DNA from: Vitrella brassicaformis CCMP3155
Taxonomy: Eukaryota > Protista > Chromerida
Reading direction: 5' to 3'
Length of the DNA stretch: 64,000 nt
Assembly: GCA_001179505.1 (NCBI GenBank)
Contig: CDMY01000281.1
Span: 62,001-126,000, forward strand
In this document: positions 4,810-39,497 of the stretch, one piece after another
Position numbering within the stretch: position 1 is the first letter of the stretch
How the letters are laid out: each line of letters begins with the position of its first letter
Notes under the pieces: generated by a model
Databases searched by the model: none
Told to the model about the DNA's origin: nothing
What the model saw: the letters and a program-made list of their open reading frames with translations, nothing else
Program-made: the position numbers and the translations under genes

Positions 4810-5278
4810 CGCTCACCGCAAACCCATCACGCCAACGCTATCACAAGACGCCTCACCGAGGCCCTATCGACGGCCACATGCCTCACAAATGGCTGCAAGT
4901 GGCTCATCGCTCTCGTGGCTTAGGGTCCTTGTGAAACGGGATACTGAGAATGGCGAGCTTTTTTTTGTTGAGGAATTCTTGCGTTGAGGTTTTGAAGGCC
5001 TGATTTGATCAGATGCTGCCGAGCAAGCTCGAGATCGGCAGCATTGCGGCTGCGACAGCGGGTCTCAAGCGCCTCAGGGGAGAGCCATGCGGGGCAACGA
5101 GCGAGTCGCCTCACAAGGTAGGGGAGGTGGGCAGCACGACCCGACCAGAAGGGCAGGCTTCAAGTTGCCGCAGCGCAATGCCTCACTCCCACGTTGCCGG
5201 CCATTTCTGCCGTTGTGTTGACCGTGGGTATATACCGTCTTGCGTGTGTTGCAGAGGCGTTGCTACAATGTGCCGCTG

Positions 5279-7196
5279 ATGAAGCCGCCCCTGCCCGCCC
5301 CTCCGCCGCAGGGCGAAGTGCCAATTGCACCAAACTCTGACAACGGGGCCTCGGTGTGTGAGCTGACGACAGTCAGTCAGCCGATCGTGGCCGCGCGTGT
5401 GTATGTGTGTGTGATGGTCTTCCTTCGTGTGTGTGGGGCTGTTTGTTTGTTGTCAGGGTCGGCCGGTGCAGGCAGCGTGGAGCAGCGAGGAGGACGCCCA
5501 CCTGTACCATCTGGTCATTACCTGTGGCTCCAACAGGTGGGCAGTGCAGTGCCGCACAGAGAGCAGGCAGCGGCGGCGGCTCGGCTGTGGTTCATTCAGA
5601 CATCCGTGTGCTCTGGCTGGCCTCCCTCCCTCCCTCCCTCCCTCCCTCTGTGTGTTGTGCGTCCGTCAGGTGGCGCGACGTGGCCGCGGCCCTCAACCAC
5701 AAGTGGCACAACAACAGGACACGTAAGCTCCTCTTGTGTGCTATGGGCACCCGCCATTCGGCATTCCACATCTGTGTCGGTTTGTTCAGCGAAGCACTGC
5801 CGTGAGCGTTGGGTGCTGCACGTCGACCCCACCATCAAAAAGTTAGTCTCAGAGCCTTGTGTGCACCGACTGACTGGCACACAGGCAGGCAGACACATGT
5901 GGTTGTGTGCTCTGTGCGCCTGCACTGCACTCAGGGGCGAGTGGACCGAGGAGGAAGACCACCTCATCGTCGCCAAACAACGAGAATGGGTTCGTCACAG
6001 CGAGCCACGACACTTTACTGGTTGTCTGTGTGCGACGGACGTTGCCTGGTTGTGTCGTCTGTGTGCTCACTCACAGGGCAACTGTTGGGCTGACATCAGC
6101 CGTTGTCTGGAGGGCCGTGCGGTGCAGGACGTCAAGAACAGGTGGCACCAGCTGTGGCGGCTCGCGCAGCGACGCGACTTCCAGTCCATTCAGTTCGACG
6201 CCACCGACCCCAAGGAGGACCAACACATAAGGCGTACGCAATGCTTCCCCTGTCTGTGTCTGTGCTGTTGGATGGATGCCCTTCTGTCTGCCTGGTGTGG
6301 TGTGTGTCTGCAGTATCAGCCGTCATCTATATGCTGCACCATGGCCACAGCGCCCCCAAGACCACCACCACCACCACCAGCAAGACCAAAGGAACCGCCT
6401 CGCCACAAGAAGAAGGAGGAACACCCGGCCCGCTCCCTCCCCTCCCCACACCCCCTTCGATGCCTCCCCTGCCCTCCCCCTCCCCCGAGCCCTCCCCCTC
6501 ACTCTCCCCACCCACACACACACACGCCCACGCCACAAGGGGCGGCGGCAACGGCGTGAGCAGCGACTACCTTAACTACCTCTGGGTCATATCCCTCTTC
6601 GAGGCGCAGCTCAACGCCACTCTCGCCAAGGACAAGGACGGCACCAAGGATATTGCTAATGCTCCTGCTGCTGCTGCTGCCGGCGGTGGGTCGGCAGATG
6701 GATCAGCTGGTCCGTTGGAGGGATTGACGGCCAGCGAGCTGATCGAGGCACAGACGAGGTTTGTGCAGGACTACGTGGGCAGGCAGCTCAGGGAGGGGGG
6801 AAGTGGTGGCAGCGGCGGCAGTGGCAGTGGCGGCAGTGGTGGAGGGGACATGCCACTGCACCCAGGTAAAGTGAGTTGTTGGGTTAGGGTGACTGACGGA
6901 CGAATGAACAATGGCTGTTCTGTCTGTCCGTCTGTCTGTCTGTGTCTGTGTCTGTGTCTGTTGTGTCAGCCTTGCGGGCTCTGTCGTCCTTCTCGTCGGC
7001 GGCATCGGCTGGTGGTGGTGGAGGGGAAGCTTGCAACCACCTCCCCTTCCCGCCGTCACTCTTCCCATCACCCGACCCACAACACCCACAGCACCCACAC
7101 CAGCAACTGGAGCGGCGACTCGGTGTCTCACTCTCGTCGGCAGAAGGTGTCAAGGCGGAGAGGGGCGTGGCTACGGCGCCACTGGCCTTGTCGTGA
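5279..7196 (+). CDS. R2R3-type Myb DNA-binding protein, multi-exon
   Basis: Exons give WSSEEDAHL...RWRDVA...KHCRERWVLHVDPTIKK / GEWTEEEDHLIV...GNCWADISRCLEGRAVQDVKNRWHQL, i.e. two Myb repeats with regularly spaced Trp, then a low-complexity C-terminus. The start codon is uncertain. Confidence 0.85.
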
Positions 7197-8126
7197 CTAA
7201 GGACCGGGGGTGTGTGCCCCAAATGTATTTAACGGCGGATGCATGTGTGCCTGTGTCTGTGTCTGTGTGCGTGTGTGCGCGAACCTCTGTCTCTGCTGCC
7301 TGTGAGAGGGTGTATGTGTGTGTGTATCGGTGCTGCACGCACGATTCATCCGATTCTACTTACCGAGCGGCCTATTATGCCTGTGACCCCGTAGGTCAGA
7401 TCAATCGACTTATTTGGTTTGCGACTGATTTGGCTTGTAGTGAGGTGACCGGCGGCCAAGTGAACAGAGCAGAGACAGAACAGGACAGGACAGGACACAG
7501 CACGACTAAAGTTTTTCCGCGGGCTAGGCTTGTTTCGGTATCCTGAGTACGCGATGGCCCTTGTTGTCTGCTGGCTGGCTGGCCGATGAGTCAGTCGGTT
7601 AAGGTGTGCTCCTAGTGGTATGTGATCCGGATGCCATCACGGAAGTGGATAACAACAATTCAGTGCTGTATACTTGTCTCTCCTGCACCTTTCTGCTCGT
7701 CTGTCTGTTCGTCTGGTGGGGGCGTGTGTTGATGTCGCGTCGGGTGACGATGGCAGACGTGTGTTACTCCCACATGCGGCCGCCTCCGTCACCAGACGCG
7801 CCGGCACCGACACACGCCCCGCACCCGGCCATTGATGGACACACCGATGGCTGGATGTGTGCATGTGTTTCTCTCTGTCTGTCTGGGTTTGTGCTGGCTG
7901 TGTATGTGTATGTCTGTTCATCCAGACCGACCCATTGAGGCCGGCAGAGAGAGCAAAGACGGTCATGTGCATAAAATTAAGTGTCTTCCCCCGTTCGTTG
8001 ACTACGCAACAACGTGACGAGCGAAGCATTCGTGTCGATTTCCACTCTTCTCGGGTCCATCCATCCATCCGTCCATCCCTCCATCCATGTGTACACCCCA
8101 ACAGCATCGGTCGGTCGGTCTGTTGG

Positions 8127-9645
8127 TCAGGCGAGTGCCGCTTTGGGTTTGTTGAAGAATGGCTTGAGCGACCACTCCACCTCCACGTCGCGCATGTCCA
8201 CCGAACCCAACTCTATCCGATACAGACGCATCACGAACCTGCACACACAAAAGAGCACAGAAACGTACGTATCTCTTGCTCGGTTCGCACCCACCCATCT
8301 CTCGCCCCATCGACCCACCTCGGGCCCGCCTCAGTGAGCTGCAACTGCTCCTTCTGCTTCTCTTCTGCCCTCTCCTTCTTGCCCTTCGGCTGCCTCTCCT
8401 TCTTGCCCTTCGGCTGCCTCTCCTTCGCCTCGTCCTTGCCCGTCGCCGCCTGGCCTGCATCCACTGCGCACACACACACACACACCAACAACAACAACAG
8501 CACACATGGTACACGCCCTGTGTGTCTTCCTTCCCCGGTTGCGTGACTGACCGGCAGCAGCAGCAGCAGCAGCAGCAGCCTCTCCTCCGCCGGGCTTTGC
8601 CTTTGCCCACGTGTGGTGTCTGAAGTGGATGAAGTCGCCCTGGTTGATGAAGCTCATGCACCGCTGGCCAAGCGGCGCCGCCGGCGGGAACAGGTGCTTC
8701 AGGATCGTTTCGACGCGACGACCCAGCTTCGACTCGAACTGGTGGAAGATCAAGTGCGGGGAGACCTGCAGACCAGACACACACCACATCCCGAGGGAGG
8801 GAGAAGGGATGGGATGAGCGAGCGTCTCGTCTGCCGTCCACCCTCCGTGCTTCTCACACACACACTTCTGAGATGTTTGGCGGCTTCTTGGGCAGGTCGT
8901 GCCGCAGGGCCACCTCAGACAGACCGAAGTAGGCCGTGGGGCCATACGGCAGGTGGGAAACGATCAGCCCATCAGGCTCGCCTTCAGAACAAAGATGCAT
9001 CCAATGAAAGCCAACACGACCACAGACAAAATTTTCCAGATGGATAGATATCACCTCCCTCCCTCCCTCCCTCCGACCCTCTGTGCGTGCGCACCTCTGT
9101 GCTCGTGAACAATGACTAGATCTGTGACGTCGTTTGTTTGGCAGAGTCGCACGAGGTCCTTGAGGATGTAGGCACCGCGGTTGATGCGCTGGGAGGTGGG
9201 GAACAGCAGCCGCAGCTCCTTGGCAAACTGCGCCAGCCGGCTAGACGGGTCGCGCGCCGTCGTTATCAGCACCTTCGGGTCTTTCACTCCTGCAGGCCAG
9301 TCAGTCGGTCAAGACACACACACACCACACAGACAGAGGCAGCAACAGCCGAGAAATGGGGCTCAGTCGTCCATCGTGGCATCGCGGTCTGGCATCTCAT
9401 CTACCTCTACCTGCGTAGGCGTATTCGTCGTCGATCTGCGAGCGCATCTGCATGGTCCGGTCATCGTCGAGGTCCAGCGTGGGCCTCAGCCGCTTGTCGG
9501 CGCCCCTGAGCTCGGTGGGAATGCTCTTGCCGCCCTCGAGGGCGTCCTTGAGCTTCCGCTTGCGGTCGCTCACGGCGCGCTCCTTGTCCTCGATGCTCTT
9601 GCGGTAGAGATACTCCTTCCGCAGACGAACGTTCCGACGCAACAT
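8127..9645 (-). CDS. IMP4: U3 snoRNP protein Imp4 (Brix domain)
   Basis: MLRRNVRLRKEYLYRKS...DDEYAYAG / DPKVLITTARDPSSRLAQFAKELRLLFP..QRINRG...VHEHRG / PDGLIVSHLPYGPTAYF / PHLIFHQFESKLGRRVETILKHLFP / EAGPRFVMRLYRIELG..EVEW. Confidence 0.95.
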
Positions 9646-33057: not shown

Positions 33058-34780
33058 GCATACACCACCCAGAACCCTTCCCTAGTGCAAAATTAACGTT
33101 ATGTGCCTTTTCTCTCGCTTGTCTGTTTCGGCTTGGCTGATAAGGAGACCTTCCTAGTCCGGAGGAGCTCTCCAAGAGCAGCGGGCAACGGCAGCTTGTG
33201 TAGCTAGCGGGAGGGCAAGGAGGGGGATGGAAGCTTGTTGTTGATATGATCCTTGGGTGGATGATCGTTTGTTCGTTGTTCTGCACTGCCTTGCATACGT
33301 GGCGGAGAGGTGTGTGGTGTGGTTTGCTGAATGCAGTCGTGGCAGCGAGGAGAGAGGGGGGTCGACGGGCATGGATGGATGGATGCGGGGGATGACATTC
33401 ACGGCACACAATGAGACCTGAGACGCATGAGGGTGGAGGGGACTGAGGGGAGAAGGGAGAGGGCTCTTTGACTGAGCTGAGTCTTTTTCTATCTAATCGT
33501 CGATGGCGTATCGGTGGCAGCACACACATGCCGCCAGTCTGTCGTGTTCAGCTGAACATGTAGCGGCACGCGGTAGAAAAAGAAAAAAGTCTCTCCTCTC
33601 GGCCGACGCATTTTCTCTCTCCGGTACCGACACTCTTTCTCCACTCTCGACCGGGGTAACCATACACCACACCGAAACGAAAAAGAAAGAGACACTTCTC
33701 TAACAGCCGTAGCCGACACACAGGTAGAGGTGTGTCAACGTGCGGTTACACACCATATCACACACCTGGAGGTGGCGTGTGTGGGTGTGGCAGAACTCGC
33801 CGTCAATCTTCAAACAGACAGAGACACACACGATAGGGACAGTATGTCCTGTGTAGTGGCTCCATGTTAGTGACCTAGAGTTTTCCCTTGAAGTGCCATG
33901 TGACCTGGGCGGTCCGAGAACCCGACACCCCGTACTTGAAGTTCCCGGAACGCGGCCCAGTGAATGTCTGGTTCAGGCGCCGGCCGGTGCCTGTCTCAAC
34001 TTCAACGTCGAGCTGTCAGCATGCGAATCAGAAACAGACAGAAATGTTGGAGAAAACACAGGACAAATACCTGGCCGTTGGCAAAGCACATTGTCCTGGT
34101 CTTGCCATTCAATTTGTCCTTGAAGGAGTAGGTGTCTCCATCGCATGGCTTCTCCTGCTCCTCCTCAGACGAGCGGGGCTCCTTGATGCACTTGCCCGTG
34201 CCCACTGGTGGGAGCCAGTCGATATCCGAGGACACCTTGTCGGCATTCGGCCAGGACACCTTCTCGACAGCGCACACCTTGGGCGCCTCGCACCCCTTGG
34301 CGTAACTAGGGACCCACACAACATCCCACCTCGCGAGGTCTTTCTCTGACCAAATGAAATAGAGCAGTGGAGACAAGACTTTGTGGGGATGCCGATGAGC
34401 CCTCACTCAAGTCGGTCCACTTCTCCTCTTTCCCAGCCTTGAAGAACACCGAGCAGGATGAGAAGAACAATGAGTCCCAGAATGGGCCTGTGCACATCGG
34501 ACACAATGTCATGATGGCATTGCATCCAGTGCCACTCGCAGCTATGCCGCGCCTCGCCCACCGTCATGTGCCTGGAAGAACGCTGCAGCCGTGCCGCTCT
34601 GCGGCTGTCCAAGGTCTGCAATCAGAGCCATGAAGAACGTCATGGTGGGTGGGCTGAGCTCAAATCGAGTCGTACAAGTGTGCAGTGAGCTGACAACGAA
34701 CCATTGCAGTCGGGCCCTTGCAGAGCGCATCCCTCTCCAGTGATCACGTCAGCAGCGGAGAGCCGAGCAAGGAGCAGGAA

Positions 34781-35294
34781 CACTACCCGACAAGGTGCGG
34801 CGAAAAGCTGGAGTTCCGGCCGGAAAGCTGAGAGGAGGCGGGGAAAGCTAGCTAGGCCCACAGAAGGCCAGCTAAGCCCGCGGAAAGCCAGCCAGCCACC
34901 CGGAAAGCTGGCCAGACCACCCAGAAAGCTGGCCTTCCGGGCCTCCCTGCCAGCTTTCCAGCCGGAAAGCTGGCCTGTCCAGCTTTCCAGCCGGAAAGCT
35001 GGCTTTGCCGACCTCCCTGCCAGCTTGCCAGCCGGACAGCTGGCTGTCCCGCCCTCCTGTGTGCTCAGAGGGCGGAAAGCTGGCCTTCTACACTGATGCG
35101 AAGGCCTCCACGGACAGCCCTGCGACTCTCTCCATGAATCATTGACTGTCAGTGAATGAATGCCATGCATTGGCTCCACCGGTCCCACACACTCACACAC
35201 ACACGCCGAACCCATCAATGAATGAACGAATGGATGGATGGACGGCACCAACACTCAACCACACTGATATCTCACTCACTCAATCACTCACTCA
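34781..35294 (+). repeat. Left inverted arm (514 bp)
   Basis: Reverse complement of 36086-36570 apart from a few substitutions and one extra 29-bp unit (514 minus 485 = 29). Confidence 0.95.
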
Positions 35295-35372
35295 ATCACT
35301 TGCTGCCATCCACCCACCCATCCACCCTCCCACTCACGTGTGGTGCACTCTCTCTCACACACAGACCGAAGG

Positions 35373-35407
<35 letters not shown>

Positions 35408-36085
35408 GGGCAGCGCTATGTCCTCTGCAGGTTGTGACCGAGCGTTGCTTCACGCCCGTCATGAGGCAGTCACCCTTCAAGGAGGCCATCGCAGCAGGGC
35501 TGAAGGCCAGGCCGAAGCGCACCATCGAGCTGCTAGAGACCCACCTCTCCGGCCTCGTCGAAAACAACGCCAAAGAATGGAAACAGTGCATGGAAGCGGT
35601 GAGTGTCCATGCAGAACAACACACCACGGCGGGCAGGACAGCTAACAACACGTCACCGATTGCTTTTGTCGTTGTGTGTTATAGGTGTATGTGTCGAGGT
35701 CCTGCACGGCTACCTCGATGACCGCGGCCTGCAGTCCTGTGGATTCTACAGCAACCCGCGTGCGTTCCAAAAGCCGCCGGTAGACCCGCTGATTTCTTCT
35801 GCTGTCATCAGGCAAACCTGTGACACACGACACACAGAGAGACATCGTATCAGGATCGGTGAGAGTCAGTGAGAAGGAGACACACATCGGTTGCTGTGTG
35901 TCTCAGTGTCTCTGTATGTGAGTCGGGTGTGTACTGTCGTGTGTGTCGAATGCACACGGCGGGCGGGGCAATGGGCCGGCGGGCGGCACCATCATCACAC
36001 CAGGACCTAAGGGAGACACACACACACACGAGCCCAGTGGAGACAGCAGCATGACTCCCTCTCGACTCAATCGCTAGTGAGTGAG

Positions 36086-36570
36086 TGAGCGAGTGATTGA
36101 GTGAGTGAGATATCAGTGTGGTTGAGTGTTGGTGCCGTCCATCCATCCATTCGTTCATTCATTGATGGGTTCGGCGTGTGTGTGTGAGTGTGTGGGACCG
36201 GTGAAGCCAATGCATGGCATTCATTCACTGACAGTCAATGATTCATGGAGAGAGTCGCAGGGCTGTCCGTGGAGGCCTTCGCATCAGTGTAGAAGGCCAG
36301 CTTTCCGCCCTCTGAGCACACAGGAGGGCGGGACAGCCAGCTGTCCGGCTGGCAAGCTGGCAGGGAGGTCGGGAAAGCCAGCTTTCCAGCCGGAAAGCTG
36401 GCAGGGAGGCCCGGAAGGCCAGCTTTCCGGGTGGTCTGGCCAGCTTTCCGGGTGGCTGGCTGGCTTTCCGCGGGCTTAGCTAGCCTTCTGTGGGCCTAGC
36501 TAGCTTTCCCCGCCTCCTCTCAGCTTTCCGGCCGGAACTCCAGCTTTTCGCCGCACCTTGTCGGGTAGTG
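36086..36570 (-). repeat. Right inverted arm (485 bp)
   Basis: Aligned by eye to the left arm. Confidence 0.95.
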
Positions 36571-36681
36571 AAGAAGAGACCGAGACACCAGCGGGCACCA
36601 TCTTTCTCGTCTTGCAACTTCTGCCACACGATCATCTGAAAGGTTTTACGCACAGAAGCCCACATCTTACCTAACACCGCA

Positions 36682-39497
36682 ATGCTTGTCCCGAAGCGTG
36701 TGCTGACAACCGAATCGCAATCGACGACTGCAGTGAGCACGGAAGCAACGGAGGCAAGAGAGGCGGTGGAGTATGACGAGGCGTATCGTGATCCCGAGGC
36801 GAGAGCAGGAGGGCAGCTGCAAGATGGCTATGCAGGAAGCGACGACACAGATGATGGGTGAGGCCGCTGCATGACCGGTGTCAGCTGCTTTTCTTAATTG
36901 GCAATGCTCCATCCGTGCCGTTGTGTGAGTTATGCAGCATGGCGCCGTCTGTGATAGGGCGTGGTAGTGCGTCGTCGCTCGAAGATCTGAAGGATCATGG
37001 TGGCGGCACGCCACACGCATCGCTCGCTGACGTGACGCCGCCATGCACGCCGCTGCTCGGCCTCTCAGTGGCATTCGCCGCTGTCACAGGTAAGCATCAC
37101 CTGCACCTGATCGTGGTGCTGACTGACCGATGTGCCTCCTGTGTGGCATTCACTTCCTGATTCCTTCAGGGATTTTGATGGGTTACGATTTCGCCATAGC
37201 AGCAGTGGTGCTGCAGCCGATCCAAGAGGACTTCAACTTGTGCAGCGGCCAGTTCACCTGCCGGGCAAAGGACCTGTTTGTGTCGCTCGTCGGGCCGGGG
37301 GCGATCGTCGGCGCCATGTCGGGCGGCAGCATCGCAGATTGGTTCGGCCGCCGTGTGGCCCTCGCCGCAAGTGACTTTTTCATCATATTGGCCGCCTCCC
37401 TCATGGCTTTAGGTACCTGCATCCAACACGTGTGGCGTGTCGCCCATTGCCCATGTGGTGTGTCTGTCGGTGTGTTGTGCAGGTCAATCGTTTTTTGTGG
37501 TGTTGATTGGTCGGTTCTTTGTGGGCATGGGGGCGGGCATCGGGCTGGTCAACTTCTCCACATACACGTCGGAGATATCGCCGCCCAAACGAAGAGGTGC
37601 ACTCGTCGTCTGCCAGGTGCGACGCGACGCGCCGAGGAATGAGACCACATCTCGTCTGTACGTCTCTCTATCGATCCATTTTGTCTTGTCTGTGTGTCAG
37701 GAGTTGTGTCAGTGAGTCTACGCTCACCCTGGCGTAGATCTCCGCTATGTACTGCGTGCATTGGCATTGTTATGTCTGTGTCAGATGCATCGGTGCCATT
37801 CTTGCTTTCCTGGCTGCCGTCAGTTTGGGGCCCTCCACCGAGCATGCAACCGAGAATGCGTGGCGGTGGCTGCTGGGTGCTGCAGGGCTGGTGGGCGTCG
37901 TGCAGGGGTTCGGTATCCTCCTGCTACCTGAAAGCCCCAGATGGTACGCGTGTGCGCTGGTGGGTGTGGACCCGCCATTCATCTTGTCTCTCTGTGTTGT
38001 CTCAGGCTGATGTTTCGGTATCGCGAGGAACGAGCCAGGGAGGTGATGCGGAAGCTGGGAATGGGGAGCACAGCCGACATCGACCAACAGGTACTCCGCG
38101 CCCCAGCACCCACTTGGCATTGCCAAACAAACACACACACACACGCGACCTTTTCTTCTCTGCATTCCATCAGATGGCTGCCATCCGCCGCGAGCGTGAC
38201 GGCGACAAATTCCTCGACGCGCGTACGGTCAGCTCCAATGGTTCGGATGAGTCGCTCTGCACTGCCGAGGACGAAACCGCCCACTCCCGGAAGAAGCGGG
38301 CGCCCCTGCGCGCCGACGAGGAGGGCGGCTGGGTGAAGAGGGTGGCGCTGCAATGGAGAGAGATTCGGGGGCACCGGAAGCAGATGCTCATGGCCGTCGG
38401 CTGTGCTGTGGCGGGGGTGAGGCGCACACATACGGGGCGGCTGACGGATGAATGACGTCCGCCTGTGTGTGCGCGTGACGTTCAGAACCTGACATTCGGT
38501 CCTGTGGTGTTTCCGTTGAGTGAGGACATTTTGCGGCTTGCTGGTGTGGGGCCGCTGGGGCGGTTTTGGGCTGGCCTCGGGATAGGGCTCATGAAGGTGA
38601 GATGCGTGTACACTCACTCGACTCGCGCCAGTACCCCCAGGCCCAGAGACAACCACTCTGCAGTGCACAGTGAGTGTGTGTCGTCGTCTCTTGATTCGTT
38701 CAGCTGTTCGGTGTCCTGCTGACGATGAGCACTGTAGATGTGTTTGGCCGACGTCGGCTGCTGTTTGTGGGCAATCTGGGTACGTGCTGCTGCCATCTGT
38801 TGCTCTCGGTGGCCTTCCTGTCTCACGTCCTCTATACGGGCCACTCCATCGACCTCAACGCCTCCTACACCCATGACCAGCCCGCGGAGCTATTGCCGCC
38901 CTCCCTGACGGCTGTGTTGGGGAGCCTGGGGGTGCTGCTGTTCATGCTGGCGTGGAATGTGGGCTGGGCCAGCATGATCTATGTGGTGGCGAGTGAGCTG
39001 CTGCCCAGCCGCATTAGGGGCGTCGGCATGAGCATGGTCGAGGTCACCTTCTGGGTGCTGGCCTTTGTCAACGGCAACACCATGGAACGGCTTTTCCTCA
39101 ACATCACGCCACAAGGCAAGTTGGTCGACACACGCGAGTCGAGTCGTGCGCATCTATCTATCTATGTCTGTCTGTCTGTGTGCCTTCAGGGACGTTCCTG
39201 CTGTATGCGTGTTTGAACGCATTATGTTTTGTGCTGATATGCGTGCTGCCGGAGAACACTGGCAAGTCACTCGAAGACATCAACGCGGCCCTCTCGCCAC
39301 ACACACGACATCATACAGCAGGAAGCAATGACGGCGATGGCGTCAAGATGGCCTGGCCCGCACCGGCCGACCAGCACAACGGCGGCGCTGTTGAGATGGC
39401 CCAGAAGGTCGGTCCTGTGTGTGTGGGCAAGAAGGTGCTGCACAAACAGTCCCGTGTGCTCCAATACGACATGATGGACGATGAGACCAGCGACTGA
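36682..39497 (+). CDS. MFS sugar porter family transporter
   Basis: GILMGYDFAI, ADWFGRR, GRFFVGMG.G, YTSEISPPKRRG, LPESPRW, DVFGRRRLL, YVVASELLPSRIRG, LPENTGKSLEDI. An upstream acidic exon (ATG 36682) splices in frame to the ATG at 36939. Confidence 0.92.

What the first reader, a model, noticed from the sequence alone, without database searches (positions are those of the whole stretch)
35295..36085. Pack-CACTA-like cargo: intron-containing fragments of two convergent genes inside the element
The interior has host-style exon-intron structure on both strands. Plus strand: exon 35431-35598 (VVTERCFTPVMRQSPFKEAIAAGLKARPKRTIELLETHLSGLVENNAKEWKQCMEA, cag|...|gtgagt), then an exon from 35685 or 35699. 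Minus strand: exon 36006-35958, then an exon from 35817 (joined reading SWCDDGAARRPIAPPA-VCLMTAEEISGSTGGFWNARGLL*, stop at 35746-35748). Both pieces lack a 5' end, are cut off next to an arm, and overlap at ~35700-35817. Retained introns imply DNA-level capture, as in plant Pack-MULE and Pack-CACTA elements. I know of no such gene-capturing system described in this lineage.
Basis: partly seen in the sequence, partly recalled or inferred. Interest (0 to 1): 0.8.

Follow-up and report, generated by a model that had tools for sequence, protein, structure and literature searches.

The report
Patchwork centre of a small transposon
A small jumping-gene relic in the alga Vitrella carries a patchwork in its middle: one real exon of an orphan gene and a piece copied from another gene's probable intron. 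It is not two captured genes and it is a single case, so it is a modest curiosity rather than a gene-capturing system.

Summary
The genome is Vitrella brassicaformis CCMP3155 (72,700,666 bp in 1064 scaffolds, as published). Window 34781-36570 is a 1.79-kb non-autonomous transposon with CACTACCCGAC... ends and two 0.5-kb inverted arms, 98% identical. Other first readers of this scan noted the same element on this same DNA.

Its 779-bp centre has three parts.
- 35301-35422 is the family's own sequence.
- 35423-35841 holds a real 168-nt exon (35431-35598) between cag| and |gtgagt. It matches an exon of the same length and boundaries on contig C701 (24/56 residues, E 5e-8). That is an old paralogue, not a donor.
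- 35842-36072 is 95% identical to a repeated, probably intronic stretch on C429, downstream of a Peptidase_S74 exon.

A sister copy on C838 has 26 nt where the window has parts two and three.

Its two "exons" lie in pieces of different origin, and its GT donor is AT in all C429 copies.

No close donor for the exon piece exists in the assembly. The C701 gene lies just inside the arm of a related transposon family, so the exon may be a relic of the element lineage's own gene.

Verdict: one host-derived insert is likely; Pack-type capture of two genes is only partly supported. Interest is low to moderate.

The parts
34779..34780 (.). possible 2-bp target-site duplication (AA), left copy
   Evidence: The flanks read ..caggAA|CACTA and TAGTG|AAgaag. 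A 3-bp reading (GAA/AAG) does not match. Removing the element plus 2 bp opens a 131-aa frame on the minus strand, against 96-97 aa for 0 or 3 bp. The C838 copy shows no matching duplication, so this stays unproven.
34781..35300 (+). left arm (long terminal inverted repeat) with the CACTACCCGACAAGGTGCGGCGAAAAGCTGG terminus and GGAAAGCTGG / CCAGCTTTCC subterminal repeats
   Evidence: Inverted repeats I1 and I2. The arms are 98.4% identical over 491 ungapped columns, with one 29-nt indel. The same terminus has sharp, unrelated outer flanks in 12 or more places. Of the AAAGCTGG / CCAGCTTT motifs in the 64-kb window, 14 of 15 lie in this element.
35301..35422 (+). family-own inner segment (CCAC/CAC-rich, then (GA)n, ending GACGGGCAGCGCTATGTC)
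   Evidence: It is shared with copies on C838, C227 and C383. All four copies diverge from each other within 14 nt of GACGGGCAG / GCTATRTC / AACAG.
35423..35430 (+). 8 nt ending in a 3' splice-site-like ctctgCAG
   Evidence: The C701 homologue has gctcCAG at the same place.
35431..35598 (+). exon A: a complete 168-nt (56-codon) exon of an orphan gene family
   Evidence: It shares 24/56 residues with C701:22495-22662(-). Length and boundaries are the same. dN is about 0.6 and dS about 1.7.
35599..35698 (+). probable intron (GTGAGT donor; acceptor at 35684 or 35698)
   Evidence: The signals are. The read-through frame shows a weak same-register similarity to C701 for 12-30 codons (p about 0.01), so an intron is likely but not proven.
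35699..35841 (+). unmatched stretch; candidate second exon 35699-35819 followed by gtgaca
   Evidence: There is no DNA match in the genome. The similarity to C701 is not significant. Only a YL..GL motif lies at a comparable distance from exon A.
35842..36072 (+). piece 95% identical to a repeated segment on contig C429, carrying a 31-nt insertion in the window copy
   Evidence: The C429 copies lie 1.9-4.6 kb downstream, on the same strand, of an exon with a Peptidase_S74 domain. They are GT/CA-rich with no recognisable coding frame. They show no link to the transposon arms or to the C701 gene.
36080..36570 (-). right arm, the inverted copy of the left arm
36571..36572 (.). possible 2-bp target-site duplication (AA), right copy

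Best explanation
Window 34781-36570 is a non-autonomous, foldback-type TIR transposon with CACTA-type ends in Vitrella brassicaformis. The centre of its palindrome was broken and rebuilt at least once, leaving three parts. (1) The family's own inner sequence, up to 35422. (2) About 420 bp with one complete exon and its splice signals. I read this as a relic of a gene carried by the element lineage itself, the counterpart of the orphan gene that lies inside the arm of the related family on C701. I do not read it as a recent capture from a host gene. (3) About 230 bp copied from a host locus on C429, probably an intron of a Peptidase_S74/MYRF-like gene. It was most likely pasted in as templated filler when a break at the palindrome centre, or an excision gap, was repaired.

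Shown: the anatomy, the homologies, and the absence of parts 2 and 3 from the C838 sister copy. Inferred: the order of events, the repair mechanism, and the transposon origin of the exon. Nothing indicates that the fragments are expressed or functional.
For: The anatomy and family are. C838 has 26 nt where the window has parts 2 and 3. Four copies break within 14 nt of each other, as expected for a fragile palindrome centre.

For the exon as a lineage relic:
- It has no donor above about 70% identity in the assembly.
- Its only relative is an old paralogue (43% aa, dS about 1.7). That divergence matches the divergence of the two arm families, which are 62% identical over 127 nt and in register from base 1.
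- The paralogue lies on the inner side of a family-2 terminus at C701:19690. Its open frames reach to about 630 nt from the arm's repeat array.
- The locus also holds a Ty3/gypsy element.
- With about 50 such arms among about 22,800 genes, I estimate the chance of this adjacency at roughly 0.2-0.5% (inference).
- The C701 gene is a single-copy orphan. It has no Pfam, PDB or Atlas relative and no relative among 1.84 billion representatives.

For the C429 piece as host-derived: it is 95% identical to a locus without arms or C701-like sequence, next to a Peptidase_S74 exon.
Against: No autonomous element or transposase of this family was found. The C701 gene therefore cannot be shown to be transposon-borne. 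No second arm was found on C701 up to the contig end. Other solo arms abut ordinary host genes, for example Glyco_transf_61 on C411, so the C701 adjacency could be coincidence. The C701 gene is single-copy, which is unusual for a transposon gene. The direction of transfer between C429 and the element is not proven.
Confidence: 0.45

Rival explanations
1. Pack-type capture. Both foreign pieces were captured at the DNA level from host genes, and the element carried them to this site. One is the exon piece, from a now lost or unassembled paralogue of the C701 gene. The other is the C429 piece. The route could be the one proposed for Arabidopsis Pack-CACTA, in which neighbouring insertions and incomplete excisions lose one end (PMC6379663). 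It could also be template switching during gap repair.
For: The interior is absent from the C838 copy. The exon keeps both splice signals. The C429 piece is 95% identical to a non-element locus. The cargo comes from two loci, as in many Pack elements (PMC8903248). Solo, one-ended arms are common in this family, the product that the Arabidopsis model predicts. The C701 gene is single-copy like a host gene.
Against: There is no donor for the exon piece. Its only relative is 43% identical and sits inside the arm of a related transposon family. The C429 piece appears to be non-coding. Only one such element exists. The C227 copy carries other dispersed repeats, not a gene, at the same place. The target-site duplication is unclear.
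Confidence: 0.3
2. No host capture at all. The whole centre is what remains of a larger autonomous element after internal deletions. The C429 repeat is a stray fragment of that same element, or received the piece from it.
For: No autonomous copy is available to exclude this. The shared segment is flanked by unrelated DNA in both loci, so the direction of transfer is open. C429 is a gapped, tandemly repeated region that may be partly an assembly artefact.
Against: C429 has no arm sequence and no similarity to the C701 gene. It lies within what looks like a Peptidase_S74-domain host gene. The segment occurs nowhere else in the genome.
Confidence: 0.1
3. Not one element. Two independent, truncated arm insertions in opposite orientation flank host DNA that has always been at this locus, a decayed paralogue of the C701 gene.
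For: Solo truncated arms are the commonest form of this family.
Against: The two arms are 98.4% identical to each other but only 86-92% identical to other copies. They end at the same inner position. C838 has the same paired design. No other exon of a C701-like gene lies in or around the locus. A sugar-transporter gene starts directly to the right. Removing the whole unit plus 2 bp restores an open frame.
Confidence: 0.05

Closest known systems
Pack-CACTA / Pack-TYPE transposons of plants (Catoni et al. 2019, PMC6379663; Gisby and Catoni 2022, PMC8903248)
   Same: It is a non-autonomous element with CACTA-type ends (plants CACTACAA, here CACTACCC) and no transposase. Its interior holds DNA from more than one other locus, including an exon with intron signals. 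The family is rich in one-ended remnants.
   Different: Only one piece has an identifiable outside source, and that piece looks intronic. The exon has no parental host gene in the assembly, and its only relative is transposon-associated. It is a single element with no evidence of mobility or expression. The expected 3-bp duplication is absent. The lineage is a chromerid alga, not a plant.
Internal-deletion derivatives of autonomous TIR elements (dSpm from En/Spm, Ds from Ac; my own knowledge)
   Same: Both ends are intact. The interior retains a scrap of an intron-containing gene. Unrelated filler sits at the deletion junction.
   Different: No autonomous parent has been found, so colinearity cannot be shown.
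Foldback-type elements and long-TIR MITEs (my own knowledge)
   Same: The arms make up 57% of the element and are built of short subrepeats. The middle is variable between copies.
   Different: The termini are CACTA-type and the family is low-copy.
Templated filler DNA at repaired double-strand breaks (my own knowledge)
   Same: Short stretches of 200-400 bp from ectopic loci are joined end to end at a break. A small local duplication (31 nt) lies inside one of them.
   Different: The junction donors are not all known, so microhomology could not be scored.
Giant non-autonomous families carrying non-transposase genes in Ectocarpus, called 'analogous to Pack-MULE' (PMC12477816)
   Same: It is a non-plant alga with TIR elements that carry genes unrelated to transposases.
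   Different: Those are large multi-gene families. This is one 1.8-kb element with fragments.

Membership tests
CACTA / CMC (En/Spm) superfamily | Terminal inverted repeats beginning CACTA | tested here: met
   Both ends, and 12 or more other copies, begin CACTACCCGAC(A/G)AGG with sharp outer boundaries.
CACTA / CMC (En/Spm) superfamily | Arrays of subterminal repeats in both orientations | tested here: met
   GGAAAGCTGG / CCAGCTTTCC units fill both arms. Of the core motifs in the 64-kb window, 14 of 15 lie in the element.
CACTA / CMC (En/Spm) superfamily | Target-site duplication of fixed length (3 bp in CACTA proper; 2-4 bp in the wider CMC group, from my own knowledge) | tested here: inconclusive
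   The window has AA/AA (2 bp); a 3-bp reading, GAA/AAG, fails. C838 has CTG/ATG with no 2-bp match. The frame test favours 2 bp.
CACTA / CMC (En/Spm) superfamily | An autonomous partner encoding a CMC-type DDE transposase | tested here: inconclusive
   PF02992 and PF12940 found nothing in the genome, but the controls were silent too. The interiors of nine other copies share no coding similarity and have no transposase domain. Earlier scan notes report low-copy CMC/RAG1-like transposases elsewhere in this genome; I could not fetch them.
Pack-TYPE (Pack-CACTA) elements | Bounded by the TIRs of a TIR family and lacking a transposase | tested here: met
Pack-TYPE (Pack-CACTA) elements | The interior matches non-transposon coding genes, with a parental locus outside TIRs | tested here: inconclusive
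   The C429 piece has an outside source at 95% identity, but that source looks intronic. Exon A has only a 43% paralogue, which lies inside the arm of a related family.
Pack-TYPE (Pack-CACTA) elements | Not a singleton: family members with the same ends and different or no cargo | tested here: met
   C838 has a 26-nt centre. C227 has other dispersed repeats at the same junction.
Pack-TYPE (Pack-CACTA) elements | Mobilised with its cargo (second copy, empty site or excision) | not testable with these tools
   The cargo occurs once in the assembly. No population or long-read data are available.
Deletion derivative of an autonomous element | Interior colinear with the genes of the autonomous parent | tested here: inconclusive
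   No parent was found. The only indirect support is that the exon's paralogue lies inside a related family's arm on C701.

The most novel reading that the evidence does not exclude
CACTA-like foldback elements of Vitrella pick up pieces of host genes at the DNA level and carry them to new sites. That would be Pack-type gene shuffling in an alveolate, outside plants, with this element as the first example (exon piece and C429 piece both host-derived).
Probability: 0.3. Interest if true: 0.5.

Novelty: new member of a known kind. Interest (0 to 1): 0.3.

Why it matters
If host DNA really was carried by this element, DNA-level exon shuffling by TIR transposons would not be confined to plants. 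It would also operate in a compact genome with few transposons, close to the apicomplexan parasites. As it stands, the case is one dead-looking element holding one exon and one probable intron scrap, with no sign of expression. Its practical value is smaller. It warns annotators that this exon is not a gene. It also points to two related, previously undescribed CACTA-like families and to an orphan gene on C701 that may be a transposon accessory gene.

Tried and rejected
1. A donor for the whole interior in the genome. Only family copies (35301-35422) and C429 (35886-36072) matched.
2. Exon B homology to C701. It was not significant in local, restricted or same-register tests.
3. Identity of the C701 gene. 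Pfam, the word search, 1.84 billion representatives (the three hits are repeat proteins), PDB sequences and the Atlas gave nothing. AlphaFold gave pLDDT 32, so no fold search was run.
4. The weak own-genome hits. They match the CA-repeat read-through of an intron and are spurious.
5. A transposase. PF02992 and PF12940 rang nowhere, and neither did the controls. tblastx among the interiors of nine copies found nothing shared. Pfam on their longest frames found only a host glycosyltransferase.
6. A link between C429 and the arms or the C701 gene. None was found.
7. The C227 interior as alternative cargo. It consists of other dispersed repeats, not a unique gene (45).
8. The TIR in metagenomes. 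There were no matches.
9. Reaching the rest of C701 through a Vitrella protein of the neighbouring gypsy element. The best hit was only 45% identical, so there was no handle.
10. More genome DNA.

Full report
ORGANISM AND ELEMENT. The window is G000:C281:62001-126000 of an assembly of 72,700,666 bases in 1064 contigs. These are exactly the figures published for Vitrella brassicaformis CCMP3155, where transposons make up only 1.5 Mb and class II elements 0.17 Mb (PMC4501334). Window 34781-36570 is a 1,790-bp element with two long inverted arms, 34781-35300 and 36080-36570. The arms are 98.4% identical over 491 ungapped columns, with one 29-nt indel. Both ends read CACTACCCGACAAGGTGCGGCGAAAAGCTGG, and the outer flanks are unrelated in every copy. 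The arms are built of GGAAAGCTGG / CCAGCTTTCC subrepeats. Of the core motifs in the whole 64-kb window, 14 of 15 lie in the element. The flanks allow a 2-bp duplication (AA) but not a 3-bp one. The C838 copy shows neither. Removing the element plus 2 bp opens a 131-aa frame on the minus strand. A sugar-transporter gene (Sugar_tr) starts just to the right.

THE FAMILY. A terminus pattern finds about 24 places in the genome, but only the window copy and C838:1901-3400 are paired. The rest are solo arms, truncated at different inner points or cut by contig ends or gaps. What follows the solo arms shares neither DNA nor coding similarity. In one case it is an ordinary glycosyltransferase gene. No transposase was found with PF02992 or PF12940, and the controls were silent as well. 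CACTA-type ends and subterminal repeats are therefore met. The target-site duplication and the transposase remain open.

THE INTERIOR IS A THREE-PART MOSAIC.
(a) 35301-35422 is the family's own sequence. It is shared with C838, C227 and C383.
(b) 35423-35841 has no DNA match anywhere in the genome.
(c) 35842-36072 is 95% identical to three copies of a 1.1-1.5-kb tandem unit on C429. The window copy carries a 31-nt insertion.
The C838 copy goes from GACGGGCAG through 26 unrelated nucleotides straight into its right arm, so (b) and (c) are specific to the window copy. The four copies that reach this region diverge from one another within 14 nt. C838 diverges after GACGGGCAG, the window after GCTATGTC, and C227 and C383 after GCTATATCAACAG. 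In C227 the continuation consists of other dispersed repeats. Breakpoints this tightly clustered suggest a fragile centre rather than random deletions (inference).

THE PLUS-STRAND EXON IS REAL. It lies between ctctgcag and gtgagt. Its only relative in the genome is C701:22495-22662 on the minus strand (E 5e-8; reciprocal 5.9e-10). The two share 24 of 56 residues. Both blocks are exactly 168 nt, preceded by CAG and followed by GT. The score is 118 against 25 +/- 4 for shuffles. Differences fall 22/23/35 by codon position, with dN about 0.6 and dS about 1.7. These are therefore old paralogues kept as coding sequence, not a donor and its copy. The upstream side of the C701 exon is clearly an intron, because the frame changes, a stop intervenes and the sequence is a CA-rich tract. 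A second exon from 35699 has plausible signals but no significant similarity. The read-through frame after exon A resembles C701 weakly for 12-30 codons (p about 0.01).

THE MINUS-STRAND GENE IS NOT SUPPORTED. Its first 'exon' (36006-35958) lies in the C429-like piece and its second (from 35817) in piece (b), two segments of different origin. Its GT donor is AT in all three C429 copies. Nothing at the protein level supports it. In C429 the shared segment is GT/CA-rich with no recognisable coding frame. It lies 1.9-4.6 kb downstream, on the same strand, of an exon with a Peptidase_S74 domain. It is therefore probably an intron of a MYRF-like host gene. C429 has no arm sequence and no C701-like sequence.

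WHERE DID THE EXON COME FROM? The C701 gene is a single-copy orphan. It has no Pfam domain. It has no relative among 1.84 billion representatives, PDB sequences or the Atlas. A structure model was useless. Earlier notes of this scan describe low-copy, two-gene RAG1/CMC-like transposons in this genome, and that prompted me to inspect the surroundings of C701. At C701:19690 a second TIR family begins: CACGACAAGGCAAGGTCTGGCCGAAAAGCTGG, followed by AGAAAGCTGTCT / AGACAGCTTTCTG repeats. It aligns with the window's arm in register from base 1, at 62% over 127 nt. This family has paired copies on C620 and C603 and many solo arms. The arm points into the orphan gene, whose open frames reach to about 630 nt from the repeat array. 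A Ty3/gypsy element lies on its other side. So both genomic copies of this exon sit on the inner side of arms of two related families, and the exons have diverged about as far as the arms have. With roughly 50 such arms among about 22,800 genes, I estimate chance adjacency at 0.2-0.5% (inference). This favours the view that the exon belongs to a gene carried by the element lineage and that the window copy is a deletion derivative. Against this view, no second arm and no transposase were seen on C701, other solo arms abut host genes, and the gene is single-copy.

MECHANISM (INFERRED). The element is a long palindrome. Its centre, or the gap left by an excision, was broken and repaired. One scrap of the lineage's own gene was kept, and about 230 bp was copied in from C429 as templated filler. 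The alternative is Pack-type capture of both pieces. The Arabidopsis model of neighbouring insertions plus incomplete excisions that lose one end (PMC6379663) would fit the many solo arms seen here. Pack elements with DNA from several loci are common in plants (PMC8903248). Pack-like non-autonomous families have been noted in a brown alga (PMC12477816). I found no report for chromerids.

VERDICT. It is one decayed element in a nearly extinct family, which makes it a new member of a known kind.

Noticed in passing
L035:9690-10000 (= C701:19690-20000): This is the terminus of a second, related TIR family: CACGACAAGGCAAGGTCTGGCCGAAAAGCTGG, then AGAAAGCTGTCT / AGACAGCTTTCTG repeats. By coordinates only, paired copies lie at C620:33398-34261 (0.86 kb) and C603:184605-186908 (2.3 kb), with about 15 solo arms.
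   Followed up: partly
L045:1-3336 and L047 (= C701:20720-24100, minus strand): A long multi-exon orphan gene with an acidic tract, a KG-rich tract, the exon-A homologue and a 278-aa terminal open frame. It is single-copy and has no relative in any library searched. It may be a transposon accessory gene.
   Followed up: partly
L035:3421-8925 (= C701:13421-18925): An apparently intact Ty3/gypsy retrotransposon, with a 660-aa frame, a 910-aa frame matching RT, RNase H and integrase families, and a further 156-aa frame. It lies directly left of the family-2 terminus.
   Followed up: no
L036:3303-4475 and 4853-8711 (= C429:11303-16711): An exon with a Peptidase_S74 (MYRF-type) domain is followed by 2.7 tandem units of 1.1-1.5 kb, interrupted by 300-N gaps. 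The tandem may be partly an assembly artefact.
   Followed up: partly
window 35401-35430; L039:535-560; L044:8535-8565; L037:2715-2745: Four copies of the family diverge from each other within 14 nt (GACGGGCAG / GCTATRTC / AACAG). Three of the junctions end in CAG, like a 3' splice site. The reason for this clustering is unexplained.
   Followed up: partly
L039:1-543 (= C227:1-543): The interior of the C227 copy contains a dispersed repeat of about 130 nt (12 or more places at 76-81% identity). It also contains two short segments that occur as inverted pairs on C491 and C1040, so a small MITE-like family may exist.
   Followed up: no
window 36682-39213 (+): A sugar-transporter (Sugar_tr) gene starts about 110 nt right of the element, at the candidate ATG 36682. 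The element may therefore sit in its promoter or 5' UTR rather than in an exon of a minus-strand gene.
   Followed up: partly
L020:2-937 (= C411:23811-24746): A Glyco_transf_61 gene lies within 500 nt of the inner side of a solo arm, which shows that solo arms of this family abut ordinary host genes.
   Followed up: no
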